Below are positions 10,655 through 34,937 of a stretch of 64,000 nt of DNA, one piece after another. This DNA comes from Hemiscyllium ocellatum (taxonomy: Eukaryota), in contig NC_083442.1 in NCBI RefSeq assembly GCF_020745735.1, forward strand, positions 36,366,072 through 36,430,071, read 5' to 3'. A program made the translations under genes and the position numbers. Under the pieces are notes generated by a model, which saw only the letters and a program-made list of their open reading frames with translations, did no database searches and was not told where the DNA came from. Position 1 is the first letter of the stretch, and each line of letters opens with the position of its first letter.

Positions 10655-10792
10655 TTAACTGAGCTGGTGGCTCCGTGCACCGACTGCATTGACATGGCAA
10701 ACTTCAACGTCAGCCTCAAGTCGTTGCAGCTGGTCCAGCCACACCATCTGTTTGTGAGAGAGTTGGTCACTTGGACCTTTCACTTCTGCAAG
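10655..10792 (-). CDS. FAN1: FAN1 exon 13 (catalytic ExK, stop)
   Basis: [45 protein letters not shown]. Confidence 0.95.
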
Positions 10793-13700
10793 CTGGAAAC
10801 CAGAGAAAATTGACAGCTTTTAAAGCAAGGCAGTCACTTCAGAGAAGAGAAACAGTGTATATTCAGGTTTTGTAGTGTGTAAAGATGCAGGATGCATTCG
10901 CATAGATAGTGTCTCACTTCTACTCACCTTGTACTGGCAGCTGTGGCTGTTCCATACAACAAGATCAGGGAGACCCGCTCGGCCATTCCTCAAATCTTTG
11001 GCCAGAATCCTACAAATACCACTTAGGAATGGACCACCCAGACAGCTTACCAGGCTCTGAAAAACCCATACATGTCAAAGGAGACAGTCAATAGTTGTCC
11101 TTTCACTGAAATTGCAACTGAATACAGAGGAACCTCGATTATCCAAATATCAATTATCCGAAGAGGACCTTCGGGACGGGGGCTTGCGCAAGATATGCTG
11201 CTGCCTAGTCTCCAGAACCGGGAGCAGACTTATCAGAAAGCTCCGAGCCCCAAAGGAAAACTATTAACTGAATAATCAATTATCAGAACGAAATAGTGCC
11301 TGCCCACCTCTTTCAGATAATCCCGGTTCCTCTGTAATAGGTAAAGAAACTGTAATCCTACCATAGTAAATACAGATGCTGTATACCTGAGTCTGCTGAA
11401 GCGAGCTGAAGATTTCCCAGTTAACTAATGTGGCATTTATGTCTCTGTGACCATTCCATACATCAGCGATGAGCGTGCAGAGGGTCTCTTTGGATGCATT
11501 TTGCAGAAAGTTTACCCGTGACTCAATGCATTCCCTCCGTTGCTGATAAAAACAATCAGTGTAGAGATCCAGAGGACATGACTAAACACAAAGACATGTT
11601 ATTATTTCTGTACACAGCAATTTCCAGGTGGGAAACTCATTATTCAATTTGCTTTTTGCAACATTTGACCAGTAGAATGGTAATGACAATCATGAAAGAA
11701 ATCAATGTAATGGAGGGAAAGTTTGATGAAGGTGTCAAGGTTATGATAGGATTGAATGAGCCAGACACACAGGTTCCTAATGGCTGACGATACAAGATCC
11801 AGGTGACACTGAATTAAGTTTTGGGCATGAGGTACACAGTGGACGTGAGGAAGAACATCATTATACAGTGACACTTTACAGATACCTGATAGGGATTTCG
11901 GAAAACATCCGGGATTCCAGACTGAAAGATAATGTCCCAGAAGAGAAGTCCAAAGAGTGTTAAGAATGTGGTTCCTTCACCATGTATTCCTGTAAGAGAA
12001 AGAAAATGATAGATCATCACACAGCCTTTACTGTCAGAAACTCGAGCAGATTAAGTGCAGTGATTACCCTGATCAAAACCTTGCTGCCGATAGTAGGCCA
12101 GAGAAACCTCCTCCACTGAACAGATAATGGTATCGCAAGGCTCCCCTTGGCCCAAACTTGGTCCTTCACTGGTGTTCTCCATTAGGAATAAAGCATTGCC
12201 CATCCCTGGGCATGACCTGCCCTTTATCGTCACCTAGAAAGAAAATTACAATCAGGTGGGATCCACTTCCAATCCTTGACTTGCCTGAAATCATTTACAG
12301 GATAATGCAAGAGTCCCCTGAATGAAGAAAACACTGGAATTGTGAGGGATGCACAGGAAGACCAATTACAATTAAGCCTCATCTCAAAGGATACAATCAG
12401 CCATGGGAGAAGGCAGGAGAATAGGGTTGAGAAATATATCAGGTATGATTGAATGGTGGAGCAGACCGCTGGGCCAATGGTCTAATTCTGCTCCAATGTC
12501 TTATAGTCTACGACCATATAGTTCCTTTGGAAGTTCTGATGAGGAAGATTCTTGTAAACAATTATGTGGGGCAGGTGGCCAAGTAACTGGCATTTGTGGT
12601 CAGGTATCCAGCTAGTGTCAGTGATTTCAGGAGTGGAGCTCAGCAAACTGGGACCAATCCTCTATCAGGTTAGGCGGAGGAAGGAGATCTGGTTTCCTTG
12701 TGAAATGAAGCAGCAGCTGTTATTGCATCTTACAATGGAGGGTCAGATTTTGTATCGGTTTTGCACCAATACCTAGTCAGGCCTTTGCTCACAACTTCAT
12801 GGAAATAACATAAATCAATAAAATGATTTCAACAAACTATTTATGTCAGACGAAGACAAAGAAAGTGGGTCAATAACTTGGGGCTGTGACATCCTTAGAG
12901 ACACTCACATGTGGCACATCCTGTACTCTCACTATTGGCAGATTCTGAAGAAGGTGACACCATTTCTTGCAGCTTGGGGAGTCACGAATCCGTACTGCTC
13001 GTTGATATAAAGCCAGCCGATGGCTCATGTGAACACAGTCATCATCCAACCCTTTCCGCAAACAGTGGATTGCCTGGAAGTCAAAATCATATGAAGAAAC
13101 CACTGTAACAGAATAATCTGAGGAGATCATTAGTCAGCTGAGTACAAATCAACTTTCACTGCCTATTTAAAACTTTGACATTTCTCAACCAGGTTACCGA
13201 CCCTAGTTAGTTATCAAAACTTGTTTATTATGTAATAAAGCACACCAGAATTGGAGCATTGGGTTCAATTCCCGCCACTGTGTGAAAAATGGATGGATAT
13301 CTTGTCATAGATCAATTAGAACTAGGGTCTGTCCTGTCATAGCAACATGCTCATGTATACAAGTAGTTGGCAAAGATATCAAACATCATAACTTTAAAGC
13401 AATCTCAATTACTTGATCAGTCTGCTTCAGATGCTGATGGAGATTCAGACTCAGTCGATTCCACCAGTGGCCACGGCTGTTTGGACAATAGATGCTTTGT
13501 TCCAAAAGACTTTGCAGTTCCTCCACTGCTTCCTGAGAACAGGATTCAAAAACATAATGGTATCAGCAGCTTCAATCACTACATTATATTAATTAAGTTA
13601 AACTAAACCAACCAATGCCACTGTTTCCAATTCTGAATGCCCATACAAGATCCCTAGGCCTTGCAGTTAGGGGATCTTGTGTGGGCATTCAGAATTGGAA

Positions 13701-16700
13701 ACATTTAAAAAGGTTTAAAAATAAAAATGTATTTGTGGGATGTGGGCATTGCTGGCCAGCCAGCATTTATTGTCCACCCCTAGTTGCCCTTTTGAACTGC
13801 TGCAATCCACCTGCTGTGAGTCAACCCAGAATGCCATTGGGGAGAGAAATCCAAGATTCTGACCCAGTGACAGTGAAAAGACAGTGACATATTTCCAAGT
13901 CAGGGCGGTGACCGGCTTGGAGAGGAATTTGTAGGTGGTGGTATTCCTATAAGACCATAAGATATAGGAGTGGAAGTAAGACCATTTGTCCATCGAGTCC
14001 ACTCCTATGTATCTACTGTTTTGTCCTTCTAGATGAAAGTGATTATAGGTTTGGAATCTGTCTGAGGATCTTCCGTGAATTTCTGCAGTGCATCTTGTAG
14101 ATAGTACACACTGCTGCTATTGAGCGTCAGTGGTGGAGGGAGTGAACGTTTGTGGGTCTAGTGCCAATCAAGCAGGCTGCTTTGTCCTGGATGGTGTCAA
14201 GGTTCTTGAGTATTGTTAGAGCTGCACTCATCACGTGCTATGAAGTATTCCATCACATTCCTGACTTGTGTGTTGTGGATGATGGAATGCAGCCTTGACA
14301 TCAAGGGCTCGCACTCTCACCTCTAGAACTCAGCTCTTTTGTCCATATTTGAACAAAGGCTGTAATGAGGTCAGGAGCTGAGTGACCCAGGTGGAACCCA
14401 AACTGGTGTCACAGAGCAGGTTATAGAATCAGAGATGTATAGCATGGAAACAGCCTCTTCAGTCCAACTCGTCCATGCCAACCAGATATCCTAATCTTAG
14501 AACCCCTACAGATTAATCTAGTCCCATTTGCCAGCATTTGGCCCATTTCCATCTAAACCTTTCCTATTCATATATCCATCCAGATGCTTCTAAATGTTCT
14601 AATTGTATTAGTCTTCACCACTTCCTCTGGCAGCTCATTCCATACAAGCACCACCCTCTGCATGAAAAAGTTGCTTAGGTTCCTTTTAAATCTTTCCCCA
14701 CACAACTTAAACTCATTTCCTCTACTTTCGGACTCCGCTACCCTGGAGGAAAGACCTTGGCTATTCACTCCATCTATGCCCCGCATGAATTTATAAACTT
14801 CTGTAAGGTCACCCCTCAGTCTCCAATGCTCTGGGGAAAAATAGCTCCAACCTATTCACCCTCTCCCTATAACCCAAACCCTTCAATCTCAGCCACATGC
14901 TTGTACATCTTTTCTGAACCCTTTCAAGTTTCCTAAAGCAGGGAGGCCAGAATTCGACATGTCCAAAAGTGTCCTAACCAATGTCCTATACAGCTGTAAC
15001 ATGACCTCAAACTCCTATACTTAATGCACTGACCAACAAAGGCAAATATACTATCTTGTCAACTTTTGACCCTACTTTCAAGAAATTATGAAGCTGCATT
15101 CCAAGGTCTCTTTGTTCAGCACCACTCCTCAGGCTCTTACCTATAACTGTATAAGTCCTACCCATTCAAAATGTAGCACCTCAGATTTATCTAAATTAAA
15201 CTCCATCTGCCACTCCTTGGCCCATCTGCTCAAATCTCGTTGTACACTGAGGCAACCTTCTTGGCTGTCCACTACCCCGCCAATTTGGTGTCACGCTGAA
15301 CAGGTGCTGCTTGATAGCACTCTTGATGACATTTTCCATCATCTTCCTGATGATCCAGAGTAGACTGATTGGACAGTAATTAGCTGGGTTGGATTTGTCC
15401 TGCTTTTTATGTACAGTATACCCTTGGGCAACTTTCTAACATTGTTGGGTACATGCCAGTGTTGTAACAATAGTGGAACAGCTTGGGTTGGGGAGCAGCT
15501 AGATTGCTGTTCTTGGCATTGAATTACTATGGTCTTATCAGGCTTCTACATTTCTTTACCTCATACATGTGCAGTCGTTGTAAAATTTCAACCCCATAGG
15601 TTCTGATCCGTGTGTAGACCCAGCCTGTAGTGAAACGTCGCAGATACACTGGGAGCTGCTGGTGAAACCTAAAATTAAGGAACATTTGTCACTTACTGTA
15701 AGATGAAAAAGAAACACTTACCAAGTAAACACCTGAACATTCAGTTTGACTAAAACACCAAGGTTCTGGATTTTTCTTTGTGCTTTCAGTTTCAAACCAG
15801 TTTGCTATTGTAGACTTTGGTCAGTTGACTCAGTCACTGCAGGATCCAGATTCACAGACAGGTACAGTAGGGAGAATAAAAATATATACTGGGGCAGGAA
15901 GTATGAATATTAACATGACAGTGTAGAGTGAGCTGTACTCTGTACCTAATATGTACTGTCTTGGTCCTGGGAGTGTTTGACAGGGCAGCGTAAAGGACAG
16001 AGAGCTTTACTTTCTTTTTTAAAAGATTAGATGGATCTTAACTCTGTACCGAGCTTTATGCTGTCCCTGTCCTGAAGTGTTTTATGGTGACATTGCTGAC
16101 TGCTTTAATTTCAGTTAAAAGGAGTAGAAGGAGCATTACTCTACATCTAACCCCATGTTGTCCCTGCCTGGGAGTGTTTCATGGAGTCAGTGTAGAGGGA
16201 GATTTACTTTCAGTTTAAAAGAGTAAAGACATTTTTACTTTAAATGACAGTGGGCTTGAGTAAGCCCATGCTATCCCTGTTCTGGAAGTGATTGATGAGG
16301 TCAATGTAAAGAGAGCTTTACTTTTAGTTTAAAAGACTAGAATAAGTTTTATTCTGTATCTAACCCTATGCTATTCCTGTCCTAGAACTTGTGATGCGAG
16401 TTATCCAAATTTGTACTGCTTGCTAATGATTTTGCACTACATTCAGCCATCTAAACTCCATACTGAATTCAAAATCTGTACTAACAAAGACCTCAAGCCA
16501 ACTCTAGCTTGGCAACTTGCCATACTGCCTCACGAAACATATACCCTCACACTTCAAACTCCAGCCTTTCCTTGGATTACTGTTTTCACTTAACATTTGG
16601 TAATTCTTATGTCATACTTTCTCTTCACTTCTTCTGTTTCTTACGTCACGCTCTCTCTGTTGTCCTTGTGAAATATTCTAGGGTTATTTGCTGAATTAGA

Positions 16701-19700
16701 GATTTGGGAGGTGCAGCACTAACAAGAAAGAATGCGTTGTTCCCATGAAACTGCTGGCCAGGAGATAGTCCCCACACTGTGCAATCCTGCTCTTTACCTG
16801 ATGTCACTGTTCTCCAGCTGGCTCCATTTCTCCTTGGCGGTTTTACAAATCTGGAGAGCATCACTCCAAAACCCACTGGTCATCGCGGTGATTACCTCGG
16901 CCAGTGATTGCACGGCTTCATTATATCTATCAGAGACAGTCAACACACCTATTAGGGAGCAGATGAGCACCTTTGGATATGGAGTCTATGATGGAGCAAA
17001 CTGACTGTGCCAGTCAGAAAAGTGTTTGAATAAATGCAGAGTAGTAATTCTACATTGAAGTCAAAACCACAGTCAGCATAATGCTGTACAACCGCCATGG
17101 GGAGCTTTGCACACCCTAACACCCATTCACTCAACAACATGTCCAACCCCTCTACCTATTCCACCTATAATTGATCTGGCTAGACATAGAAGCAATTCCT
17201 AGCTTGGGTGGGTTTGCCATTAACTGTATGGATGCTGCAGTTAGAGTGGATCAAGATGTAGCATCACCTGAGCAGGTCATCTCTGTGTTGGAATATTTTC
17301 TTCTCCCTCAGCACAGTGTAACTAGGGAAGGTGACATGACCCATGTTGACCATGAGCACAGTGGACAGCTGATTCTGGCCAGCACAGGCTGCTTCCTCTT
17401 CATCTGTGTAGTCCGTCAGATTGAAAAGTAGTAATAGCCGTGAGAACACGGCACGGGCTGGAGCAGCAACTTTCACACAATTTCCGACCATCTTCTTCAC
17501 CCTGACAACACACATCGTTGTTAAACAAAAGCCATTGAGTTAGGCAGGATTTAAATTTTAAGTACACAGTCATAGAGTTCTACAGCATGGAAAAAGAGCC
17601 TTTGATCCAACTCGTTCACACCAACCAGATATCCTAAACTGATCTAGTCCAATTTGCCAGCATTTGGCCCATATCCCTTAAACCCTTCATATTTATATAC
17701 CCATCCAGATGCCTTTTAATATTGTAATTGTACCCACCTCCACCATTTCCTCTGGCAGCTCATTCCATACACACTACCCTTAGCCTATTCAGCTTCTCCA
17801 TATAGCTCAATCTCTCTAATCTCAGGAACATCCTTGCAAATCTTTTCTGAAACCTTTCAAGTTTAACAACATTTTTCCTTGAGCAAAGAGACCAGAATGT
17901 ATATGCTAAAAGTGGCCTCACCAATGTTCTGTACAAAGTCATTTCAGCTAACTGGTCTCTGTTTATGCTGCACATCAGCCTTGTCTCAGCTTTCTTCATC
18001 AACTTTTATCAGCTCATACTTTCGTTCCTTAGTGCTTATTCTACTTTTCAATGAACATACTGACTTTAAAAGAGCAAAGAGAGCACACAGGCCCCACAGC
18101 ATTGACAGTACCATCAGTTATCATGTAGTCCCTCCCTAACTGCTACCCGTCAAGAGTCTGCACACTGTCCCAGTCCAAAAACCTCCCACAATTAGAAACT
18201 TTGCCTTTGCCCTCCTCTACAACCCAAATCCCTCAACCTCCTAGACCAGATTCACTTCCCCCTTGCTTTATCCCTCCCTGGAGCAGAGACACCCCCATCC
18301 TATTGCTTTTACTTGCCCCCTCACTGGGGCATGGGCTCCACTCTGCTCTAACATGCAGCTGGTATAAAGTTAAATGGTGTCTTTTGAAAGACCTGTTGAG
18401 AATGGCGAGGCCAGGACTCGATGGCTTCTGATTGCAGCTGAAGATTGATTGTTGCTTCGCCAAATGTAGCAGAGACTCCAATATTTCTGCCCTCTGACCC
18501 TGGGATCGCAGGTGGAAGCTTCTCGCCATTAGTTTGAGTTCAGGAGCAGATAGCAGGTTCAGGGCCTCTGAGACATTGCATAAATCTGACTCTGGGAAGG
18601 TGAAAAGATCATTGTCAGTGTATAACACACTGGGACCCAGGATAGTATGGGCCAGGAATGCCTGGGGAATGGGGGATAAACAATGTAAATAGGGGACAGT
18701 TGCTGCCTCCCCCGGGACCCTGAGCTTAGCCCAAATTGAATGTTTACTGCAGCAACACCATTGGTTTCACATGTATATGGCACAGCATCTGAAGAACAGC
18801 AAAAGGCCCTAAGATTTTACTGGAGAGTGGCAAAGGTTAGTAACAGATCAAATAAAGAAGCAGGCCCTTTCCTGGTGAAGGGTGTATGCCCAAAATGCCA
18901 ATTCTCCTGCTCCTCAGATGCTACCTGACCTGCTGTGCTTTTCCAGCACCACACTCTTGCCGCAGGCACTGAGTGAATAGAAGAAATTTACCAACGGTTG
19001 AGGTTTAAGAAAGTTTGTCAGATGCAGGGTAGAAAGTCTAAGATGGTGGCCAAATGAATTGGTGAGGGTCACAGCATGCTGCAGTCATGGAGATGGAAAA
19101 AGATTCTATATTCATTAACACCGCTATCTTCAATTTGCTGATTAAAATCTACCCTCCTCATGGGAGTCCATACCTGTCAGTAACAAGCCTGCAAGGCTCA
19201 GTTCCTTAATGGTGGGGGTCAGATCCAGACCAATATCAGGATAATTCAGTTTAGTCACTTTCAACCAATTCAACTTCCGTTGAAAGAGTCGCACATAGAG
19301 CTTTTGGCCAGTTGCTGTGGATAAAATGAAGCACTCAGTAAGTAGAGCAAGTAAACAGTAACATGAGTTAAGGACATTCTTTTATGTCAGCTGCCAGTTT
19401 TTACTTTTTTGATACTTTTCCTTTTGTTTTCATGCAGGAGGACATCACTGGCTAGGCCAGCATTTATTGCCCAAACTTAAGGGTCAACCACATTGCCATG
19501 GGTCCAGAGGCACATTTAGAGTCATAGAGATGTACAGCACAGAAACAGACCCTTCAGTGCAACTCGTCTATGCCATCAGATATCCTAAATTAATCTAGTC
19601 CCATTTGCCAACATTTGGCCGATACCCTTTGAAACCCTTCCTATTCATATACCCATCCAGATGCCTTTTAGATGTTGTAATTGTACCAGCCTCCACCAAT

Positions 19701-21960
19701 TCCTCTGACAGCTCATTTCATATATCCACCACCCTCTGTGTGAAAAGGGTTTTAAATGTTTCTCCCCACTTAGGCCAGACCAAATAAGGAGAGACAGGCA
19801 GAAGGCTAGAAGAACACAGCAAGCCAGGCAGCATCAGGAGGTGGAGAAGTCGACATTTTGGGTGTAATCCTTCTTCAGGACTGAGGGGTGGGTGTGGGAC
19901 AAGCTGCAAATAAAGGGGGTGGCAGTGGCAGGGTGGTGAAGTGGAGATAGGTGAAGACAGGTAGAGGATATAATCTGCTTGGTCAATAGGAGGAATGAAT
20001 CCAGTTGGTGGCAGTGAGTTGTGGAAGAGTTGGGGAGGTGCTGGGAAGGGAGATTATTTGAAATTGGAGAACTGAATGTTGAGTCCTCCAGGCTGTGGAC
20101 CGCCCAAGTAGAAGGGGTTTTTAGATTACTTACAGTGTGGAAACAGGCCCTTCGGCCCAACAAGTCCACACCGACCCGCCGAAGCGCAACCCACCCATAC
20201 CCTTACATTTACCCCTTACCTAACACTACGGGCAATTTAGCATGGCCAATTCACCTGACCTGCACATCTTTGGACTGTGGGAGGAAACCGGAGCACCCGG
20301 AGGAAACCCACGCAGACACGGGGAGAATGTGCAAACTCCACACAGTCAGTCGCCTGAGTCGGGAATTGAACCCGGGTCTCTGGTGCTGTGAGGCAGCAGT
20401 GCTAACCACTGTGCCACCGTGCCGCCCTAAATTGGGTTGTTCCTCCAATTTCCATCTCTGGTGACAGCCTTCAGATGGACATTTAGTACAAGCCCACATC
20501 CACAAATAACTGCCTGGAGTACACCTCCTCCCCAGTATCCTACAAGAACTCCACCCCATTCTCCCAAGTCCTCCGCCTCTACTGCATCTGCTCTGATGAA
20601 GAGACAGTCCACGCGCCAGCATCTCACGTCTACCTATTTCGCGTAATGTGCGTCTCCTCCATCTGTCATCCAGACAGCCCTCCATCGCACCATCTACATT
20701 CTCCGTTCCATTGCTCTAAGTCCCGCACAATGCAATAAAGAGTCTCCCTCATCCTCACCTGCCACTGCAACAGTCTCTGCATCCAACGCATCATCCTTAA
20801 ACACTTCTGCCAAATCCAACTAGACCCCATCACCAAGAACATCTTCCCCTCTCTGCTCAAGACATTTGAATTATGATTCCAATAACACAACAGCCAAGAT
20901 CCTTTGGCTCTGGAGTGGTACGCAGGGATGTTGTTGTTGATTGTTCTCCAAAAAAAAAGCAGCAAGTGGGCTTCCTATCAAATCTCAAAGAATTCTAGGC
21001 GAAGTAGGTTCCACCACCCCCACAATGACTCCTGAGTCAGAGACAGGCTCTAGTTCTATTCATACAACAACACATTGAGCCTTGGGAGGCCTGACCACTC
21101 CACCTGGTCTGGATCACTCAGTGCTCTGCTCTCCTGAGACCAGCAGGAGCTGCCCGAATGGACTTGGCCACAATTTACTGCCAGCTCAGTGCCTCTGTCT
21201 AATCACCTGAGAGTTTCTGGAAAGTTCCTAGCCAGTAATTATCATCTTCATTGAAAAGCTCTTTATCTTCACTCGCCAGAACCGCTTCCATCACCAGCAG
21301 GAAATTGCTCAGGTAATAAGGGACGGGAGGCCTGCCCTTCCCCGGACCCGCTCCCTCCCCGGGGGCGGGGGCCGGGGCCGCTCCCTCCCCGGGGGCAGAG
21401 TCAGGGTCCGCTCCCTCCCCGGGGGCGGGGGCCGGGGCCGCTCCCTCCCCGGGGGCAGAGTCAGGGTCCGCTCCCTCCCCGGGGGCGGGGGCCGGGGCCG
21501 CTCCCTCCCCGGGGGCAGAGTCAGGGTCCGCTCCCTCCCCGGGGGCAGGGGCCGGGGCCGGGGCCGCTCCCTCCCCGGGGGCGGGGGCCGGGGCCGCTCC
21601 CTCCCCGGGGGCAGAGTCAGGGTCCGCTCCCTCCCCGGGGGCGGGGGCCGGGGCCGCTCCCTCCCCGGGGGCAGGGGCAGGGTCAGGGTCAGGGTCAAGG
21701 GCCGGGGCCGCTCCCTCCCCGGGGGCAGGGGCAGGGTCAGGGTCAGGGTCAAGGGCCGGGGCCGCTCCCTCCCGGGGGGCGGGGGCCGCTCTCCGATGCC
21801 GCCTCGAGAGTCTGCATGGAAGGCGGCCGCTTCTGCTGTCAGCGCCGCGGGCACCAGTCCGTGTTTCTGGCGGGGCCGGGGCCGGGGGCGGGGGGTTCAG
21901 GCCGCCCCGAGCTCGGAGAGAAAGGCGGGAGCACGGCCTCTTCGGGACAGGGGACAACAT
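10655..21960 (-). CDS. FAN1: Fanconi-associated nuclease 1, 13 coding exons, 2583 nt / 860 aa: complement(join(10655..10792,10928..11056,11387..11581,11886..11989,12068..12233,12909..13073,13413..13532,15560..15668,16798..16926,17268..17501,18393..18591,19174..19314,21207..21960))
   Basis: All introns GT-AG and phases consistent. Motifs [24 protein letters not shown]-region [11 protein letters not shown]-region [17 protein letters not shown] and GIHGEG are present. The VRR-nuc PD-(D/E)xK motif is intact (GLPDLVVWN...LAEVKGP). Confidence 0.96.
10928..11056 (-). CDS. FAN1: FAN1 exon 12 (catalytic PD)
   Basis: [43 protein letters not shown]. Confidence 0.95.
11125..11334. mobile_element. Tc1/pogo(Tigger)-type MITE in a FAN1 intron
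   Basis: TA|CAGAGGAACCTCGATTATC ... GATAATCCCGGTTCCTCTG|TA terminal inverted repeats with TA TSD. Confidence 0.85.
11387..11581 (-). CDS. FAN1: FAN1 exon 11
   Basis: [23 protein letters not shown]...[14 protein letters not shown]. Confidence 0.93.
11886..11989 (-). CDS. FAN1: FAN1 exon 10
   Basis: [35 protein letters not shown]. Confidence 0.95.
12068..12233 (-). CDS. FAN1: FAN1 exon 9
   Basis: VTIKGRSCP...[19 protein letters not shown]. Confidence 0.94.
12909..13073 (-). CDS. FAN1: FAN1 exon 8
   Basis: AIHCLRKGL...[20 protein letters not shown]...VQDVPH. Confidence 0.94.
13413..13532 (-). CDS. FAN1: FAN1 exon 7
   Basis: [40 protein letters not shown]. Confidence 0.94.
13715..15495 (-). 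mobile_element. L2/CR1-clade LINE fragment interrupted by a CR1 (14424-15290, -)
   Basis: Same family as 42760-43560, 51290-52650 and 61262-62075. The nested CR1 gives ORF 14568..14786. Confidence 0.8.
15560..15668 (-). CDS. FAN1: FAN1 exon 6
   Basis: [36 protein letters not shown]. Confidence 0.94.
15915..16385. repeat. Degenerate tandem repeat (~65-90 bp units)
   Basis: Recurrent GACAGTGTAGAGGGAGCTTTACTCTGTATCTAACCC...TGCTGTCCCTGTCCTGGGAGTGTTT. Confidence 0.75.
16798..16926 (-). CDS. FAN1: FAN1 exon 5
   Basis: [43 protein letters not shown]. Confidence 0.9.
17268..17501 (-). CDS. FAN1: FAN1 exon 4
   Basis: VKKMVG...[11 protein letters not shown]...HRDDLLR. Confidence 0.94.
17566..17945 (-). 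mobile_element. CR1 3' fragment
   Basis: [10 protein letters not shown]...[12 protein letters not shown] plus CR1 tail. Confidence 0.8.
18393..18591 (-). CDS. FAN1: FAN1 exon 3 (SAP region)
   Basis: [20 protein letters not shown]...GLAILNR. Confidence 0.93.
19174..19314 (-). CDS. FAN1: FAN1 exon 2 (141 nt)
   Basis: [47 protein letters not shown]; cag/gt boundaries. Confidence 0.94.
19785..20860. mobile_element. Penelope-like element fragments in inverted arrangement, interrupted by an HE1 SINE
   Basis: pLTR with hammerhead motif at 19849-19882 (-). The plus-strand RT C-terminal fragment resembles part of the PLE at 46613-48393. Confidence 0.7.
20121..20426 (-). mobile_element. HE1 V-SINE (tRNA-derived), apparently young full-length copy
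   Basis: GGCGGCACGGTGGCACAGTGGTTAGCAC (A box), GGTTCAATTCC (B box), V-domain TGTGTGGAGTTTGCACATTCTCCCCGTGTCTGCGTGGGTTTCC, LINE-like tail; CpGs retained. Confidence 0.9.
21207..21960 (-). CDS. FAN1: FAN1 coding exon 1 (contains coding VNTR)
   Basis: gtc[12 protein letters not shown]...[10 protein letters not shown]...FQKLS g|gtgat. An in-frame ATG at 21999 is possible but overlaps the CCAAT cluster. Confidence 0.85.
21345..21790. repeat. Coding GC-rich minisatellite, ~30-bp units
   Basis: Core CCGCTCCCTCCCCGGGGG followed by CGGGGGCCGGGG, CAGAGTCAGGGT or (TCAGGG)n variants; encodes [10 protein letters not shown] / [10 protein letters not shown]. Confidence 0.95.
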
Positions 21961-21964
21961 GACA

Positions 21965-22215
21965 GCAGAGGTCCCGCCTTTAGCAGGCCGACCAATCATA
22001 GCCCAGATTGGACCCACCCTTCACAGACCAACCAATCACAACCTGGTCCCGGCCCTTCGCTGCGCCAACCAATCAGATTGCAAGAATTGGCCCATGGTCA
22101 CGGTGCGGGAGCCTATTGGCATTTCTCTGGTGACCCAGCATTAAAACTAAATCAGAAACAGCCCAATAAACATTTGCATTGAATCACGATCGAGTATTTT
22201 TGCGCTGCGTACGAT
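21965..22215 (-). promoter_or_regulatory. FAN1 CpG-rich promoter with seven CCAAT boxes and a GC box
   Basis: CCAAT/ATTGG at 21992, 22007, 22032, 22069, 22086, 22115 and 22163; CCCGCC at 21973; CpG-rich. Confidence 0.75.
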
Positions 22216-22221
22216 GTTTAT

Positions 22222-22526
22222 AGATTAGATTCCCTACAGTGTGGAAACAGGCCCTTCAGCCCAACAAGTCCACATTGACCCTTCAAAGAGTAACCTACCC
22301 AAACCCATTTCCCTCTGACTAATGCACCTAACACTGTGGGGAATTTAGCATTGCCAATTCACCTAACCTGCATATCTTTGGACTATGGGAGAAAACCAGA
22401 GCACCCAGAGGAAACCTACTTAGACGCAGGGAGAACGTGCAAACTCCACACACACAGTTGCCCGAGGCCAGAATTGAACCTAGGTGCCTGGTGCTGAAAG
22501 GCAGCTATGCTAACCACTGAGCCACC
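22222..22526 (-). mobile_element. HE1 V-SINE between the MPHOSPH10 poly(A) site and the FAN1 promoter
   Basis: Homologous to 20121-20426. Confidence 0.85.
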
Positions 22527-22751: not shown

Positions 22752-22901
22752 TTAAAGTTTCAGCTTGCTTGTCGATAGCGCTCTTGGTTTGTTTTGCTTG
22801 TTGGCTTTCATCTTGGCTTCTCTCAGATCAGCTTTCACTTGATCTTGTAACTGGGAGAAAAAGGCCTTTGACGAGCGTAGAGTTTTGTCTTTCCCTTCAT
22901 C
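22752..22901 (-). CDS. MPHOSPH10: MPHOSPH10 exon 11 (stop)
   Basis: [23 protein letters not shown]...STSKLKL*. Confidence 0.93.
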   Translation of the reverse strand, partial: DEGKDKTLRSSKAFFSQLQDQVKADLREAKMKANKQNKPRALSTSKLKL

Positions 22902-25900
22902 CTTTTAAATGGTTAAAAACAAAATTAGGTATAATAGAAATTTTAGCTTTCTGACACCACCCCTGCAATACAGTGAATTATATGGGAAATCAAAGGCAAG
23001 AAGATTACAAAATTCTCCACAGTGCTGCATATAAAGTCTACTGCAATAAACTGGGGGCTCCTTTTTGGGGTACTGATGTTTCAGGCAGTATCAAAAGGAG
23101 AGACTTTAATAAAGTAGATAACATGGTAAATGATCATTAAGTGATAAGATATATACAAAACTTAGAGGTACTACAAAGACGTATGATATAATTGAATTGA
23201 ACTAAGCATGAGAGAGAATGTTGGAAATACACAAGTCAAAAAGGATAGGCTAGCCATTCAGAGGCTTCTATACAATGACTCAATAATAAAATTAAACTAT
23301 CTTTTCTCTCAGATGGTGACAGAACTGCTGTGTATTTTCTTCAGGAGGGATATGGGCCGGGGTGTTGACAGGTGGGACTAGATTGGGTTGGGATATCTGG
23401 TCGTCATGGATGGGATGGACCAAAAGGTCTGTTTCCATGCTGTACATCTCTATGACTCTAAGTGCTTCTCTGAAACTGCTGTACAGAGATTTTGTGCGTG
23501 AATGGATACAAATTGAATGACATGAATTTAGAGAATGCTGAAGGAACTCAAAAGGTTTGGCAGAATCTGTGGAGTAAAACGGAGTTAACTGGAGTTAATA
23601 TTTCAAATTAGAATAACTTTTTCCTGAATTTATTTCAGATTTACAGCATCCACAGTATTTTGCTTTTACTCTAATGGAAAGAATGTTTGAAATTTCGATG
23701 TAGTACATGGAAGGAAACTGGTCTGAACATTCTGTAAAGGAAACATTTGCTGTGAATAGGAATAATGGAACTTGTGTAATTATATGCCAGAGGAAGCAAC
23801 CATTGAAAGGACATAAAACGTGGTAAAATTAACTTAATCTCTCCATTTCCCATTCAGTGAGACACACATTAAACATCACACCGCTGCCTACACCGGACAT
23901 TAATCAACCCATAACAGTGCTCACCTTCAGCAGAGTTGCCTTTCCTTCCCAGGTCAATTTTCTCAATTTTTCAGCATTCTTTTCCTTCACTTGTTTATTA
24001 CTCAGCTTCACATTCAACTTCTCCACCACTTTCTGACGTGCTTCCTTCTCCTTCAGTCGGAGACGCTTCAGTTTCTTCTTCTTCCTTCTCTCTCGTTTCT
24101 TGTCCGTTGCTGTCTTTTCTGTGGCTCCCTGGATCTCCCCAGCTCGGCCCTTCTCCTGCAATTATCAGGCCAGACAGCACAAAAATAAACCAGTGTTCTT
24201 GCAAAAACTCTTCAGCCTCCTGTCATCACACTCTCTCTCAGCCTCACTGATGCTGTGACGCTGCATCATAGCCAATCAAATGTGTTGAATCTGAACTACG
24301 AGTAGCTTTGTAGTCAGCATGATCATGATCCCGTTCTTATCCATGGTATCACCAATATAGCCAAAAGTAGAAGTCCAAGCTTGAGTTCACCTTTAAAATC
24401 ATAAGCGTAGAGGCTCACATTGCAACCCTTTTCTCACGGTTATCAATTAAAATGGATTGGGCAAAGTGGGTCTCAGTGCCATTCCAGGGAAAGCCTTAGA
24501 ACTGTTGGGCTTTATCCTATCTCCCTCTTTTACCTCTTACCTTGATTTCTTCTGGTGCTAGCAGAGTGGCATCACTAACATTCACAGGTGCCACCTCCTC
24601 CATACAAATAGAAGGCAGGTTAGAGACCACCTTCACTTCAGGCATGGGCTGGCAAAAGAAAAAAAACTTCTGTTAAAAGCTGACCCCACTGGCACAGTTT
24701 AAACATTTTGTTCTTCCTCTCCAATTGACAGCCAAGGTGATTTAGTTCAATGGTTAGTGAGAGCTGCTTATTGCATGGGTGTTCGCAGTGACTGACTTTT
24801 CCTCTGGATGTGGCAGATATTGATTTTTACACCACACAAATCCCAGTCAGAGTGCTATGGGGTGATGTAAACCTGCCCCTAGGACAAATGTGACAGGATC
24901 ACAAATAGACTGCACCTAGATAGCAAGTGTAGTCAATTACACTAATCACAAGATTTAAATATCAAAAAAAAAAGTCAGTGGTTGAATTGTAGACATTTAT
25001 CTTTTGGTGTCTGAATCCAAAACTTTCAATTCTACCCCAGCACTGAGGGAGTGTGTGCTTGTTATTTTAGTAGTTTTGTTTGAGAGTTCTCTCTCCTGAA
25101 GACCTGAAATTAGTATGCTATAGATCTCAGAAATTGCTTGCATGGTCACCCACATCCAGTGATCATTCTTACGGTGAACCTTAAATGAGGGATATCCAAC
25201 CCTGTATTCCAGCAGAGGTCAGAGCAGGTGATGGGGACTGAAGCACATTGTGGTTCACCTTTGGTTTCACCTAGTTGGAATCAGTTAAATCAACATGGTA
25301 CAGAAATGCAGCTGATCTGATTGTTCCAGCAGCCCCAGATAGTGAATATCATATATCAAACAATGCATCAGAGGAAATGACTATCCAGTGGGTGCTACTA
25401 TAGTCTGGAAGTAGACACAGGCCATATACATAGTGGTACAGTCATGCAGACCAGGCTTGACTCTAATTTTGCGTTTCTTTTACTCACCGGTTTGGGTGTG
25501 AAATGGAAGTTTGAAAGTGCATCCAGTTTAAGGAAAAGGGAATCCATCAACCTCTGGATCTCAGCATGCTGCACATTTTCCTCCACTTCAGATATTTGCT
25601 GCGATTGCAAGAGTTTAATTAAAAGTCTGTCACATATGTATTCTCAGCTAATGTAATCTCTCACACCAAAATGGTCTAGCCTGTGATCTCAGTTTACTCA
25701 CAATGTCCTCACTTGCACCGGGATGGCAGGTCCTGACGGTGCTCACTCTCACCGGGGGAGATCAATACCTAAAAAGGTGCTGACTTTTATGGAGACAGTT
25801 TCATTGGAATCATTTCTGTCTATTACACACATGAACACTTAGGTATGGTGAGACCAATCAGAAAACTCTGTTTCTTCATTCTTTCATAGGATGTGGGTAT

Positions 25901-28196
25901 CAGTTGGAATGGTTGTTGCCCATCTCTCATTGTCCTTGAACTGAGCAGGTTCCTGACTATTTTAGAAGCAGTTAAGAGTCAAACACATTGCTGTGTTTCT
26001 GGGGTCACTTGTCAGCCAGTCAGATAAGTATGACAGATTTCCTTCCCCAAATGACAGTTGGGAACCAGATGGAATTTTATAACCGCTCATGGCAGTTGTC
26101 TTGGTCACCATACCTCAAACTAATTAATGTGAATTTTACAAGTTTCCATTATGAGATCTGAACCTATGTCTCCAGGTTATCAGTTAATAATGCTTGACAT
26201 CAACACTGAGCCAGGTACTGTGTCCTGTTTCAAGTTTTCCTGTGTCTAACATAGATATTAAAAACTGAACTCCTCTTCAAATTCAATTAACCCAAAGGTT
26301 TGTGATTATCCAAGATTATTACCTGAGTTTGCTTTAAATATTCCTGCTCATAAACTTCAGCCAGGCTCAGTTTGCTTTTCTCATGGTCCAAGGTGAGTCT
26401 CTTTTTATATTCAAAGGCCTCTTCTTTTGGTCTTTCCTTACGTACAACATCATCCCAAGCCTGTAACACATGGCACATGATGCTTATCCATCAATACCTG
26501 ATTGCTGTACATTAAATAGTTGCCAATTAAGAACTTATAAAAGAAAACGGTGCAGAGAACCAAACCCAACCAATTACCCCATGGCTGTCCATCATTCAGG
26601 AACAACATTGTGGAAAATTGATTGTTTGAAGGAGACTAAATGTACCAATTCCAAACATTCATCTCATCAATCTTAGTTGAAGCAGAAAATGCTGAACATT
26701 CATATGAATTCACAAAGCAAAGTGGGACTGAACATTTGAGAGGGGAATCTCCTGTCACAGCTCCAGGTCCTGTCAATATGTGGACCATATTCCTTCCTTC
26801 ACACTCTCACTAGCCCACTGGTCCCCCTAATACTTGTTCTAGGATTTTGATATTCAGCATTGCTTCACCTTAGGTCCACAGAAGATGTTACCTAGTAAGG
26901 TAACGAAACGTCTGGAAATGAACCTACATCCAAAACCTCAACCCAAGCTACAAATCTTCTCAAAACTCGCTAAGGATTTTGATATTTCTGATTGGTGGAC
27001 AGATATTTTATCCCTGAACATACAGGCTTCTCTCTGGACTGATTTTCCACATTTGCATTTTCCTTTTTTCTTACCTCATCTTTAACTACAGCAAGGAGTG
27101 TTAAATTATTACACCAAATGTCAGCCACATAACAAAACATTCCTTTCCAACAATGGTGAGAAACATCTTCCATTATGGCACATTGTTCTGACGTTGAGTT
27201 TAAGATCATGGGCTCACCTTTGATTCTCTGACAAATGAAATAATTTAATTTGTATTGGTTTTTGCTGTCCTGTTAATAATTTTGAACAGCTCTATGAACA
27301 CCTTCTCCATCTCTCTGCTCTTGCAAATTAAGTGTCATATTTGAATTAATTACACAAACATGCCACCCACATCTCAGGGTGAGAAACGTCAATGTTTACT
27401 TGGGCAACTGCAGCATTTAAAGCATACTTCATCAGAAATTTTACATATATGTGAAACATTAATCCCACTTCAAATACTCCACTTCCATTCTTAAAATTTT
27501 ATTAATTTATTCTATTATTTACATTTTCAGTTTGTGTTTTCCACATTGTTGTACAGGTGGTTCTCCTATAATGCATGTTTATTAAAGGTGATTTATCCGT
27601 AACATGATTTGTGAATTGCCAACTTTTTTTTAAATAAAGCACTAGGTGTCACAGTGTGCGCAAGACTGAGATCTGTGTTGGTATCACGTGATCAGTTGGC
27701 TTGTGCATTTCTCAAAGAGCTTCGTGAAAGGTATTATGACATGTTTGTGCGAGTGGATTTGAAAAAGCATTGCTAAAATGTCTCTACAGTCTGAGGACAA
27801 GAAGCTGGGAGCATCCTGTTAATCTAAAAACTTAAGGAGTTGAGATTAGAGAGTTGAAATTTCACTTGAATTGACTAACCGTAAAAGGAGTGTTGAGGGA
27901 TAGCTTGAAACTTGGCTTTATTGTTTGTATGAAGAGCTTTTTAATTTTTTTTTGTTTAAAAAATATGTTTAGATGTTAAAGAATATCTGTAGACTCAAGT
28001 GAATCTTGTTTCAGTGACTAATCATTATAACCAACTGCAAAATAATACCAGTACAGGGGCTTGGACATGGTCAGACTCAGGAAATACTGCACAGTGAGCG
28101 AGTAAGCTGTGAAGAAGAGATTCAGGGTTAGTCAGGGTCAGTTGGTAGCGAGGAGGAGAGTGAGCAGGGAAGATGTTACAGGAAATAGTGGGTACA

Positions 28197-28268
<72 letters not shown>

Positions 28269-34200: not shown

Positions 34201-34937
34201 CCCCCCATCCCCTCCTTACCCTTCTCCCTGTCCATACCCCCCTCACCTCCCCCAACCCAACACAGTCCTGACCCCACTGTCCTGTCCTTACCTTGTCTCC
34301 CCTCTCTGCCTGCACCTTACCCCTCTCTCCTGCCCTATTCCCCTCTCCATCAGATTGACATTCCTTCTCTTGCTTTCCCATTCTCTTTCATCCAGCAAGG
34401 TTCCTTTTCCAACCCTCCTGTTCACCCCTTTCCTCATTCTTCTCCCCGTCCTCCTCCTCCTCCTTCCATTCCTTGTCCTCCTTCCTGCCCCTTCCCTAGT
34501 CTCCTTTCTCCTCCCATCCACCCTCCATGTACTAGTCACACTCCTCCTTCACACACCCTCTTTACCTCACCCGTCCCTTCCTTCTTCCTGCCCCTCCTCC
34601 TACCACCCCAACTACTCGTCCCCACAGTGCCCTTGGCCCCCCTGCCACACCCTCCACCGCCATCCCCCCCCTCTTCCACATCCACCCCCGCCGCCCCTCC
34701 CTCCCACGCCGTCCCCCGCCATACTCCCCCTCCCACGCCATACTCCCCCTCCCACGCCGTCCCCCACACCCCCCGTCCCCCTCTCTCCCACGTACCCCCC
34801 CCCGCCGTCCCTCTCCCACACACTACCCCCCACCCCGTCCCTCTCCCCTCCTCCCGCGGGTGCCGGTACCTCAGGAGCCGTTCGGGCTGTTCCACCGCGC
34901 GCTCCAACCGTCGCACGCACTCCGCCAGCGCCGCCAT
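22752..34937 (-). CDS. MPHOSPH10: U3 snoRNP protein MPP10, 11 exons, 1983 nt / 660 aa: complement(join(22752..22901,23925..24155,24541..24648,25488..25598,26323..26460,29441..29508,29844..29985,31322..31490,32145..32293,33451..34099,34870..34937))
   Basis: GT-AG introns with consistent phases. Motifs [50 protein letters not shown] and [13 protein letters not shown]...KLKL* are present. Confidence 0.96.
23925..24155 (-). CDS. MPHOSPH10: MPHOSPH10 exon 10
   Basis: [10 protein letters not shown]...[12 protein letters not shown]...GKATLLK|gtgag. Confidence 0.93.
24541..24648 (-). CDS. MPHOSPH10: MPHOSPH10 exon 9
   Basis: [36 protein letters not shown]. Confidence 0.94.
25488..25598 (-). CDS. 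MPHOSPH10: MPHOSPH10 exon 8
   Basis: [37 protein letters not shown]. Confidence 0.93.
25880..26200 (-). mobile_element. SacSINE1-like (Deu-domain) SINE, decayed
   Basis: Homologous to 45417-45760. Confidence 0.65.
26323..26460 (-). CDS. MPHOSPH10: MPHOSPH10 exon 7
   Basis: [13 protein letters not shown]...[19 protein letters not shown]. Confidence 0.94.
27554..29140. mobile_element. Non-autonomous Tc1/pogo-type DNA transposon (1.6 kb)
   Basis: TA|CAGGTGGTTCTCCTATAA ... TCATAGCAGAACTACCTG|TA imperfect TIRs with TA TSD. Confidence 0.7.
28202..28266. repeat. (GA)n microsatellite
   Basis: About 32 perfect GA units. Confidence 0.98.
29441..29508 (-). CDS. MPHOSPH10: MPHOSPH10 exon 6
   Basis: [23 protein letters not shown]. 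Confidence 0.94.
29844..29985 (-). CDS. MPHOSPH10: MPHOSPH10 exon 5
   Basis: [24 protein letters not shown]...FDHAVRK. Confidence 0.94.
30620..31150 (+). mobile_element. CR1 ORF2 fragments with internal deletions
   Basis: [28 protein letters not shown]1 tail. Confidence 0.75.
31322..31490 (-). CDS. MPHOSPH10: MPHOSPH10 exon 4
   Basis: NQEEMAE...KVRFNLPDD...[10 protein letters not shown]. Confidence 0.9.
32145..32293 (-). CDS. MPHOSPH10: MPHOSPH10 exon 3
   Basis: [15 protein letters not shown]...EETD; AAG acceptor. Confidence 0.88.
33451..34099 (-). CDS. MPHOSPH10: MPHOSPH10 exon 2
   Basis: [18 protein letters not shown]...[16 protein letters not shown]...KMKRK|gt. Confidence 0.93.
34130..34860. 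repeat. Polypyrimidine, C-rich low-complexity MPHOSPH10 intron 1
   Basis: Strong C/T skew on the plus strand; repeats of CCCCTCCCACGCC. Confidence 0.85.

What the first reader, a model, noticed from the sequence alone, without database searches (positions are those of the whole stretch)
21790..21960. FAN1 apparently lacks the UBZ4 zinc finger, PIP box and SPYF MLH1 box, yet keeps an intact nuclease
Seen: exon 1 is one open frame. It runs from a basic NLS-like [10 protein letters not shown] through only about 30 Pro/Gly-rich residues to [11 protein letters not shown], then the repeat, then PYYL. I see no CxxC...HLD...C and no SPYF in this stretch, while SAP, TPR and PD-ExK exons are intact. 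Known (from recall): human FAN1 carries NLS, PIP, UBZ4, SPYF and the MLH1 motif LASKLSR in this same first coding exon. UBZ4 binds ubiquitinated FANCD2, and bacterial and fission-yeast FAN1 lack it. Inference: about 100 aa were lost in this lineage, [10 protein letters not shown] is the surviving MLH1 motif, and this is a natural vertebrate FAN1 uncoupled from FANCD2-ubiquitin recruitment.
Basis: partly seen in the sequence, partly recalled or inferred. Interest (0 to 1): 0.8.

Follow-up and report, generated by a model that had tools for sequence, protein, structure and literature searches.

The report
Shark FAN1 lacks its ubiquitin-binding finger
The DNA-repair nuclease FAN1 of this epaulette shark, like that of every shark, ray, skate and chimaera checked, has an intact catalytic body but has lost the zinc finger and most short docking motifs that tie human FAN1 to ubiquitinated FANCD2/PCNA, MLH1 and the cell cycle, which makes cartilaginous fishes a natural experiment on what those motifs are for.

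Summary
Window 21790-21960 (minus strand) encodes residues 1-57 of FAN1. It matches RefSeq FAN1 of Hemiscyllium ocellatum 100% over 13 coding exons (21960 to 10658).

- **What exon 1 holds:** a basic [10 protein letters not shown] motif, a 29-residue Pro/Gly-rich linker, [12 protein letters not shown], an in-frame 30-bp minisatellite, then PYYL.
- **What is missing:** no UBZ4 zinc finger, PIP box, SPYF (MIP) box or KEN box. A regex and my own profile HMMs found none in any of six frames of the 64 kb. The same HMMs hit paddlefish exon 1 at E 1e-22 and 7e-21.
- **How widespread:** the same stripped N-terminus is seen in 14 chondrichthyan species, including the chimaera Callorhinchus. A cap-proximal skate mRNA contig agrees. 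Hagfish, amphioxus, echinoderm, cnidarian and bony-vertebrate FAN1 keep UBZ4. The loss is therefore class-wide and dates to the chondrichthyan stem.
- **Orthology:** synteny Mpp10-FAN1-MTMR10 and an identical count of 13 coding exons show orthology and an intra-exonic loss.
- **What survives:** only the N-terminal basic motif and the KLSRR core of the MLH1 MIM.
- **Extra change:** most elasmobranchs have Gln at the position of human Arg507, a PCNA contact.

Uncoupling from ubiquitin-FANCD2 is a strong inference but was not tested. I found no paper describing this. An earlier scan note on this window covers only the minisatellite.

The parts
21208..21960 (-). FAN1 first coding exon (residues 1-251), GC 0.75
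   Evidence: Exact match to RefSeq isoform X1 (P0253); GC content
21958..21960 (-). Start codon. An in-frame stop lies 19 codons upstream at 22018-22020
21913..21942 (-). N-terminal basic motif [10 protein letters not shown] (NLS-like). It matches KRPRRSLSL of bony vertebrates
21790..21825 (-). [12 protein letters not shown], the surviving core of the MLH1-interacting motif (MIM; LxxxL plus SRR). L51, S52 and R53 are invariant in 13 chondrichthyan sequences
   Evidence: MIM definition from PMC13473659 and PMC8324060
21348..21786 (-). In-frame coding minisatellite (30-bp unit and higher-order 54-, 156- and 216-bp units) encoding [10 protein letters not shown]-type repeats. It serves as a spacer between the MIM core and PYYL
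21310..21321 (-). PYYL, the start of the conserved FAN1 body (human residue ~373)
21992..22167 (.). Cluster of seven CCAAT/ATTGG boxes just upstream of the ATG in a GC-rich island: the likely FAN1 promoter
   Evidence: the promoter role is inferred
19175..19315 (-). Exon 2 (aa 252-298), FAN1_HTH
18392..18592 (-). Exon 3 (aa 299-365), SAP subdomain. Codon 18449-18451 (CAA, Gln346) aligns with human Arg507
17267..17500 (-). Exon 4 (aa 366-443)
16797..16925 (-). Exon 5 (aa 444-486). It is skipped in RefSeq isoform X3
15560..15667 (-). Exon 6 (aa 487-522)
13413..13532 (-). Exon 7 (aa 523-562)
12906..13073 (-). Exon 8 (aa 563-618), end of the TPR domain
12066..12230 (-). Exon 9 (aa 619-673)
11886..11987 (-). 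Exon 10 (aa 674-707)
11387..11581 (-). Exon 11 (aa 708-772)
10928..11056 (-). Exon 12 (aa 773-815), VRR_NUC with the PD of PD-(D/E)XK
10658..10792 (-). Exon 13 (aa 816-860), VRR_NUC with EVK, followed by the stop codon

Best explanation
This is the orthologous, expressed FAN1 gene of the epaulette shark. Its N-terminal regulatory tail was remodelled inside the first coding exon in the common ancestor of cartilaginous fishes. The PIP box, UBZ4 finger, SPYF/MIP box, KEN box and the long disordered linker were deleted or overwritten by GC-rich, repeat-prone sequence. The HTH-SAP-TPR-VRR_NUC body stayed under strong constraint.

Two short islands survive: an N-terminal basic motif (probably nuclear import) and the LxxxLSRR core of the MLH1 MIM.

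Inferred mechanism: chondrichthyan FAN1 works as a 'bare' structure-specific nuclease. It would be recruited by DNA-structure recognition (SAP/TPR) and whatever PCNA or MLH1 contact remains. It would not be retained by ubiquitinated FANCD2 or PCNA, would not compete at the CDK-regulated MIP/S2 site with MSH3 for MLH1, and would not be degraded through the KEN box by APC/C-Cdh1.
For: **Identity.** RefSeq isoform X1 maps at 100% to 13 exons.

**Absence of the motifs.** Regex and HMM scans are negative in the window and in the Callorhinchus, Pristis and Stegostoma loci, with a paddlefish positive control.

**Class-wide pattern.** Fourteen chondrichthyan species lack PIP, UBZ, MIP and KEN. Thirteen of the 14 keep KLSR[RK].

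**Ancestral presence.** Hagfish, amphioxus, echinoderm and Nematostella FAN1 carry UBZ4. Hagfish and amphioxus also carry SPYF. Review PMC7990447 says PIP and UBZ are conserved in multicellular eukaryotes.

**Orthology and mode of loss.**
- Mpp10-FAN1-MTMR10 synteny holds in the window, Callorhinchus, Pristis and Stegostoma; Mpp10-FAN1 holds in paddlefish.
- All have 13 coding exons.
- The paddlefish first coding exon encodes aa 1-431 (1293 nt, GC 0.46). The chondrichthyan ones are 483-954 nt with GC 0.72-0.76.

**No room for an upstream exon.** The Mpp10 stop is at ~22755 and its polyA signal at ~22649. A SINE, then CCAAT boxes, then an in-frame stop lie 19 codons before the ATG.

**Transcript evidence.**
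- A 2450-nt skate RNA contig encodes the full 705-aa UBZ-less protein. It begins with adapter plus ...ACATGGG (a template-switch oligo end, from my knowledge) 19 nt before the ATG.
- Run X1 holds 0.80 of exon-1 words but 0.53 of the 1.3-kb stretch that includes the flanks. DNA runs show the reverse, 0.74 against 0.87.

**Intact body.** E 8e-242 to human FAN1, with catalytic motifs kept.

**Tolerability.** Human UBZ mutants still rescue mitomycin C sensitivity (PMC7990447).

**Pathway partners.** fancd2, ube2t and mlh1 transcripts are reported in elasmobranchs (10.1101/2025.04.20.649719).
Against: - There is no direct read-level transcript evidence for this shark. My only read-laying run was consumed by a filter error, and X1/X2 are only guessed to be RNA.
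- All chondrichthyan proteins except the skate contig are automatic gene models.
- A UBZ-bearing second FAN1 elsewhere in chondrichthyan genomes was excluded only indirectly. No such protein appears among the top 120 hits.
- The functional consequences (ubiquitin, PCNA, MLH1, Cdh1) are all inferred from human work.
- The MIM core could be conserved for another reason, for example as a basic NLS. Its L155-equivalent is not Leu in lamniforms, Mustelus, skates or Callorhinchus.
- The MIM-only HMM beats composition-matched shuffles clearly in only about 9-10 of 14 species.
Confidence: 0.85

Rival explanations
1. Assembly or annotation artefact: the GC-rich exon 1 is collapsed, or an upstream coding exon with PIP/UBZ/SPYF was missed, and the real protein is conventional.
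For: Exon 1 is 75% GC with a 440-bp minisatellite. DNA short-read contigs hold only 0.74 of its words. All three frames are open across the repeat. An older Callorhinchus model skipped this region altogether.
Against: - Fourteen independent assemblies give the same architecture with different repeat content.
- The window has no N.
- UBZ regex and HMM scans are negative across 64 kb and three other loci.
- The upstream gene ends about 700 bp before the ATG, and an in-frame stop precedes the ATG.
- A skate mRNA contig starts 19 nt before its ATG.
- The exon count equals that of paddlefish.
- A repeat collapse cannot remove unique sequence lying between the basic motif and the MIM core, which are only 29 residues apart.
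Confidence: 0.04
2. The tail is reduced, but the lost functions are supplied elsewhere: by a second FAN1 paralogue, by a partner protein with its own UBZ, or by cryptic motifs in the repeat region. Under this reading FAN1 is not really uncoupled from FANCD2 or PCNA ubiquitin signalling.
For: The FA pathway genes fancd2 and ube2t are expressed in elasmobranchs. The retained KLSRR island could still tether FAN1 to MLH1 complexes. A lack of evidence is not evidence of absence for adaptor-mediated recruitment.
Against: - Each chondrichthyan species shows one FAN1 locus, and no UBZ-bearing chondrichthyan protein is among the top 120 hits.
- No PIP-like, UBZ-like or KEN motif occurs in any chondrichthyan N-terminus.
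- Most elasmobranchs have also replaced the Arg507-equivalent PCNA contact with Gln. This points to a general loosening of these couplings rather than to compensation.
Confidence: 0.1

Closest known systems
Human FAN1 (KIAA1018/MTMR15), for example PDB 9GY0, 4RI8
   Same: The body is orthologous. Shark residues 204-860 align with human 364-1017 (chain residues 368-1021 of 9gy0_A, 4-residue offset) at E 8e-242, covering HTH, SAP, TPR and VRR_NUC with PD...EVK. It lies tail-to-tail with MTMR10; the human arrangement is from my memory. The N-terminal KRPR..LSL motif and the LxxxLSR core of the MIM are shared.
   Different: No PIP box, UBZ4, SPYF/MIP box or KEN box, and no R145-I150 strand of the extended MIM. 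The tail is 213 aa, mostly minisatellite, against about 372 aa. Gln replaces Arg507.
Paddlefish (Polyodon) and other bony-vertebrate FAN1
   Same: Same Mpp10-FAN1 neighbourhood, same count of 13 coding exons, and the same exon boundary after ...QLS.
   Different: The paddlefish first coding exon is 1293 nt with GC 0.46 and encodes all N-terminal motifs. The shark exon is 753 nt with GC 0.75 and keeps two of them.
UBZ-less FAN1 of Schizosaccharomyces pombe and bacteria (for example Pseudomonas aeruginosa, PDB 4R89)
   Same: A FAN1 nuclease that works without a ubiquitin-binding finger. The review states that S. pombe Fan1 lacks UBZ and PIP yet repairs crosslinks. The bacterial homologue matches only the C-terminal part.
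   Different: Those organisms have no Fanconi anaemia pathway. Cartilaginous fishes express fancd2 and ube2t and descend from an ancestor that had the UBZ. This is therefore a secondary loss in a vertebrate.
Engineered human UBZ mutants (C44A/C47A, M50R)
   Same: Expected phenocopy: loss of FANCD2 co-localisation and focus retention, with crosslink resistance preserved (PMC7990447).
   Different: These are point mutants in an otherwise complete tail. The shark protein has in addition lost PIP, MIP and KEN.

Membership tests
FAN1 (Fanconi-associated nuclease 1) orthologue group | C-terminal VRR_NUC domain with the PD-(D/E)XK catalytic motif | tested here: met
   Pfam PF08774 on exons 12 and 13. 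PDLVVW at residue 802 and EVKGP at 818 align to the human catalytic motifs.
FAN1 (Fanconi-associated nuclease 1) orthologue group | HTH, SAP and TPR domains in the order found in FAN1 | tested here: met
   PF21169 at 1.2e-15 and PF21170 at 1.6e-07. PF21315 falls below its cutoff on the single exons, but is precomputed for the full protein. End-to-end alignment to human FAN1.
FAN1 (Fanconi-associated nuclease 1) orthologue group | Orthologous genomic position | tested here: met
   Mpp10 lies upstream on the same strand and MTMR10 is convergent downstream in the window, Callorhinchus, Pristis and Stegostoma. Mpp10 lies upstream in paddlefish.
Metazoan-type FAN1 N-terminal regulatory tail | RAD18-like UBZ4 zinc finger (C-x2-C-x11-H-x3-4-C) | tested here: not met
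   The regex and the PIP-UBZ HMM are negative in six frames of the window and in three other chondrichthyan loci. The positive control scores E 1.2e-22. The finger is absent from 14 chondrichthyan species.
Metazoan-type FAN1 N-terminal regulatory tail | Non-canonical PIP box preceding the UBZ (SI.SFFN type) | tested here: not met
Metazoan-type FAN1 N-terminal regulatory tail | MIP box SPYF (MLH1 S2-site ligand) | tested here: not met
Metazoan-type FAN1 N-terminal regulatory tail | MIM (LxxxL with L152, L155, L159 and the upstream strand R145-I150) | tested here: inconclusive
   The core L-P-C-R-L-S-R-R is present. L, S and R are invariant in 13 sequences. L152, I150 and R145 equivalents are absent. 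The HMM score exceeds 199 of 200 shuffles for this shark but is low in absolute terms. Binding was not tested.
Metazoan-type FAN1 N-terminal regulatory tail | KEN box (Cdh1 degron) | tested here: not met
   No KEN occurs in any chondrichthyan N-terminus. It is present at about residues 194-225 in bony vertebrates.

The most novel reading that the evidence does not exclude
For more than 400 million years (my dating, from the holocephalan-elasmobranch split) a whole vertebrate class has run FAN1 without four couplings: ubiquitin-FANCD2/PCNA reading, the PIP box, the CDK-gated MLH1 S2-site box and the Cdh1 degron. In most elasmobranchs the Arg507 PCNA contact is gone too, while the Fanconi pathway and MLH1 are kept. 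That would make these couplings osteichthyan-retained refinements rather than vertebrate essentials. Shark FAN1 would then be a ready-made separation-of-function allele for work on repeat instability and crosslink repair.
Probability: 0.5. Interest if true: 0.7.

Novelty: new variant of a known kind. Interest (0 to 1): 0.6.

Why it matters
FAN1 is a leading genetic modifier of Huntington's disease onset. Its protective effect in human cells depends on exactly the modules missing here: SPYF/MIP and MIM binding of MLH1, and PCNA activation through Arg507. The role of its UBZ finger in crosslink repair is disputed.

Cartilaginous fishes lost the finger, the PIP box, the MIP box and the KEN box long ago, yet keep the nuclease under strong constraint. 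This bears on two points:
- It is evolutionary evidence that these modules are dispensable for the core function.
- It offers natural proteins for swap and complementation experiments.

The pattern also shows which tail elements are the most indispensable: the N-terminal basic motif and the KLSRR core.

The proteins are already in RefSeq. I found no paper that mentions the loss, in three full-text searches.

Tried and rejected
- **The search for homologous proteins with the exon-1 ORF.** It returned nothing. Low-complexity words saturate the candidate list, and full-length FAN1 falls outside the length window.
- **The look-up of encoding contigs for Carcharodon isoform X2.** The protein is not on record.
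- **The search of earlier findings for FANCD2, FANCI, MLH1 and Fanconi in this genome.** No notes.
- **Complex prediction.** Not run. The pair worth testing (shark MIM peptide with the MLH1 C-terminal domain) needs an MLH1 sequence that no tool result supplied, and I did not type one from memory.
- **Exon loss as the mechanism.** Rejected, because the exon count equals that of paddlefish and all the motifs lie in one exon there.
- **A weak PIP-UBZ HMM hit at 17311-17415 (E 0.043).** It is an off-frame CPLC inside exon 4 and is chance.
- **An acceptor site between the upstream stop and the ATG.** Considered; only a poor AAAG with no pyrimidine tract is present.
Full report
**1. What is in the sequence**

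The finding lies on the minus strand. An ORF runs from 22017 to 21199. Its first ATG is at 21960, 19 codons after an in-frame stop at 22018-22020.

From that ATG the protein reads as follows:
- MLSPVP, then [10 protein letters not shown] (residues 7-16, 21913-21942).
- A 29-residue Pro/Gly/Ala/Arg-rich linker.
- [12 protein letters not shown] (residues 46-57, 21790-21825).
- An in-frame minisatellite at 21348-21786, with periods of 30, 54, 156 and 216 bp, all multiples of three.
- PYYL (residues 214-217, 21310-21321).
- A CAG|GTGATT splice donor at about 21208.

**2. Identity of the gene**

Downstream open segments hit Pfam FAN1_HTH, Fan1_SAP, FAN1_TPR and VRR_NUC.

A phmmer search with one exon found FAN1 proteins. 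A second search, seeded with the sawfish protein, returned named FAN1 proteins from many species. Among them, RefSeq 'fanconi-associated nuclease 1' of Hemiscyllium ocellatum (isoforms X1-X3) has an N-terminus identical to the window ORF.

Isoform X1 (860 aa) maps with 100% identity to 13 coding exons from 21960 to 10658. Residues 204-860 align with human FAN1 364-1017 (chain residues 368-1021 of 9gy0_A, which carries a 4-residue offset) at E 8e-242. The catalytic PDLVVW and EVKGP motifs are conserved.

**3. Are UBZ4, PIP and SPYF really absent, or hidden?**

*Motif scans*
- A six-frame regex for C-x2-C-x(6-16)-H-x(2-5)-C found only four hits in 64 kb. All are chance hits in unrelated contexts.
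I searched all stop-to-stop segments of the window and of the Callorhinchus, Pristis, Stegostoma and paddlefish loci.
- Paddlefish exon 1 scored E 1.2e-22 and 7.4e-21.
- Nothing in the window or the three chondrichthyan loci scored better than E 0.04. The best hit is an off-frame CPLC inside exon 4.

*No room for an upstream exon*
- The gene upstream on the same strand is MPHOSPH10/Mpp10. Its exons run from 34215 to 22755, with a polyA signal at about 22649.
- Between it and the ATG lie a tRNA-derived SINE (about 22200-22520) and seven CCAAT/ATTGG boxes at 21992-22167. These look like the promoter.

*Assembly quality*
- The window has no N.

**4. Comparative evidence**

I tabulated the N-termini of 14 chondrichthyan species:
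- Sharks: Hemiscyllium, Stegostoma, Heterodontus, Carcharodon, Cetorhinus, Mustelus, Pristiophorus.
- Batoids: Pristis, Hypanus, Mobula, Amblyraja, Rhinoraja, Narcine.
- Chimaera: Callorhinchus.

The results:
- None has a PIP box, UBZ4, SPYF or KEN.
- Tail length to PYYL is 44-281 aa, against 356-426 aa in bony vertebrates.
- Thirteen of the 14 keep KLSR[RK]; Narcine does not.
- Most keep the N-terminal KRPRx(2-3)LSLRARR motif.
- An alignment of 13 tails shows two conserved islands in otherwise free-running sequence. L51, S52 and R53 (numbered as in this shark) are invariant.

Outgroups keep the finger. These are hagfish, amphioxus, a starfish, a sea cucumber, sea urchins and Nematostella. Hagfish and amphioxus also have SPYF. 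The review PMC7990447 states that PIP and UBZ are conserved in multicellular eukaryotes and absent in fission yeast.

The parsimonious reading is one loss on the chondrichthyan stem, before holocephalans and elasmobranchs split.

**5. Orthology and mode of loss**

The neighbours are the same across species. Mpp10-FAN1-MTMR10, with MTMR10 convergent, is found in the window, Callorhinchus, Pristis and Stegostoma. Mpp10-FAN1 is found in paddlefish.

All five genes have 13 coding exons.
- In paddlefish the first coding exon encodes residues 1-431. It carries every N-terminal motif and is 1293 nt with GC 0.46.
- In the four chondrichthyans the first coding exon is 483-954 nt with GC 0.72-0.76.

The loss is therefore intra-exonic. 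It was a deletion or overwriting within one exon that became a GC-rich, minisatellite-prone island. No exon was lost.

The repeat units differ by lineage ([10 protein letters not shown] here, others in rays and the chimaera). The spacer is therefore evolving by local expansion.

**6. Transcript evidence**

I have no read-level view for this shark. Two indirect lines remain.

*Skate mRNA contig.* A 2450-nt contig from a public run (SRR11241631) encodes the whole 705-aa skate FAN1 without introns. It begins with a Nextera adapter tail followed by ...ACATGGG. I recognise these from memory as the adapter and the 3' end of a SMART template-switch oligo, which marks the mRNA 5' end. The real sequence starts 19 nt before the ATG of MPPPKLKRPR.... 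That leaves no space for an upstream coding exon in a skate.

*Word shares in sequencing runs.*
- Run X1, guessed to be RNA and from a sample of the same organism, holds 0.80 of exon-1 words but only 0.53 of a 1.3-kb stretch that adds intron and upstream DNA.
- Four DNA runs show the reverse, 0.74 against 0.87.
- This fits an expressed exon 1 as assembled, but it is only suggestive.

**7. Is RLPCRLSRR the MLH1 motif?**

In human FAN1 the MIM is residues 152-163. L155 and L159 are critical (LxxxL) and L152 contributes. An upstream strand (R145, V147-I150) raises affinity strongly. The MIM binds a site on MLH1 (S3) distinct from the S2 site that SPYF uses. MIP and MIM together bind about 40-fold tighter than either alone (PMC8324060; PMC13473659).

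For the homology:
- The shark sequence keeps L-x-x-x-L-S-R-R at the same relative place, after the basic motif and before PYYL.
- KLSRRH is identical in several sharks and rays, a sauropsid and a mammal.

Against a fully working MIM:
- The L152, I150 and R145 equivalents are missing.
- In lamniforms, Mustelus, skates and Callorhinchus the L155 position is not Leu.
- A MIM-only HMM scores the real tails above all or nearly all of 200 composition-matched shuffles in about 9-10 of 14 species (199 of 200 for this shark). The absolute scores are small.

I conclude that this is the homologous remnant of the MIM. Its MLH1 binding, if any, should be weak and limited to the S3 site. A role as a basic nuclear-import signal cannot be excluded.

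**8. An extra difference noticed**

Human Arg507 makes the salt bridge to PCNA Asp232. It is needed for PCNA-stimulated cleavage, and R507H hastens Huntington's onset (PMC12078661).

The aligned residue here is Gln346 (codon 18449-18451). The distribution is as follows:
- Ten of 13 elasmobranch species with a matched motif have Gln. The other three are Pristiophorus (Lys), Mobula (Arg) and Hypanus (the Arg is shifted by one position).
- Callorhinchus has Arg.
- Among 110 bony-vertebrate or hagfish sequences with a matched motif, 104 have Arg, 4 have Pro and 2 have Lys.

Elasmobranch FAN1 thus lacks both the N-terminal PIP box and this internal PCNA contact.

**9. Mechanism**

*Shown*
- The protein is an intact HTH-SAP-TPR-VRR_NUC nuclease. 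Its short tail consists of a basic motif, a MIM core and a low-complexity spacer.

*Inferred from human data*
- It has no direct reading of ubiquitin on FANCD2 or PCNA. It should therefore show no UBZ-dependent focus retention or fork restraint.
- It has no CDK-regulated MIP binding and no competition with MSH3 for the MLH1 S2 site.
- It has no KEN-mediated degradation.
- Recruitment should rest on DNA-structure recognition, as in fission yeast and bacterial FAN1.

The loss is plausible biologically. Human UBZ mutants still rescue mitomycin C sensitivity. The Fanconi pathway itself is not gone, since fancd2, ube2t and mlh1 transcripts are reported in sharks and rays.

**10. Novelty**

The proteins are in RefSeq, so the sequences are not new. 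Three full-text searches (FAN1 with shark, FAN1 with elasmobranch, chondrichthyan or Callorhinchus terms, and FANCD2 with shark) returned no paper that discusses FAN1 in cartilaginous fishes. UBZ-less FAN1 is known from fungi and bacteria. A secondary, class-wide loss in vertebrates appears not to have been described.

I rate it a new variant of a known kind. It is of moderate-to-good interest to the FAN1, Huntington's and Fanconi fields.

The scan's earlier notes near this place cover only the minisatellite, not this finding.

Noticed in passing
window 18449-18451 (minus strand): Gln346 aligns with human FAN1 Arg507, the PCNA Asp232 contact whose R507H variant hastens Huntington's onset. Ten of 13 elasmobranch species with a matched motif have Gln; the other three have Lys (Pristiophorus), Arg (Mobula) or an Arg shifted by one position (Hypanus). 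Callorhinchus and 104 of 110 other vertebrate sequences have Arg.
   Followed up: partly
window 22755-34215 (minus strand): MPHOSPH10/Mpp10 gene directly upstream of FAN1 on the same strand, with its polyA signal at about 22649. This neighbourhood is conserved in Callorhinchus, Pristis, Stegostoma and paddlefish.
   Followed up: partly
window 194-6434 (plus strand): The last exons of an MTMR10-like gene (myotubularin-related and 3-PAP-type sequence), convergent with FAN1 as in the other chondrichthyan loci.
   Followed up: partly
window 21992-22167: Seven CCAAT/ATTGG boxes, three of them ACCAATCA about 37 bp apart, immediately upstream of the FAN1 ATG. This looks like an NF-Y-type TATA-less promoter.
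   Followed up: no
window 22200-22520 and about 20229-20400: Copies of a tRNA-derived SINE, one between the Mpp10 3' end and the FAN1 promoter and one in FAN1 intron 1. They give near-identical spurious ORFs.
   Followed up: no
window 21348-21786; P0129, P0002, P0122, P0124, P0239: The spacer between the MIM core and PYYL is a coding tandem repeat in many chondrichthyans, but with lineage-specific units and copy numbers. Stegostoma has about 200 aa of it, and Callorhinchus has a GDTAR-type repeat. All three frames are open across the array in the window.
   Followed up: partly
P0016 (Chanos chanos), P0025 (Solemya velum) and several invertebrate representatives: Other annotated FAN1 proteins lack a UBZ4 match. 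Some keep a PIP-like ...SMFK motif. These may be independent losses or truncated gene models.
   Followed up: no
P0004 vs P0239 (Callorhinchus milii): An older 646-aa gene model joins the basic motif directly to ...EDRELF and skips the GC-rich part of exon 1. The newer 767-aa model restores it. This shows how the region misleads annotation.
   Followed up: yes
window 16797-16925 and about 12066: RefSeq isoform X3 skips exon 5 (43 aa). Isoform X2 lacks FDQG at the end of exon 9, through an alternative donor.
   Followed up: no
L001:1-42: The skate FAN1 RNA contig retains library adapter and template-switch oligo sequence at its 5' end. This is useful as a cap-proximal marker, and it is also a reminder that Logan contigs can carry adapters.
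   Followed up: yes
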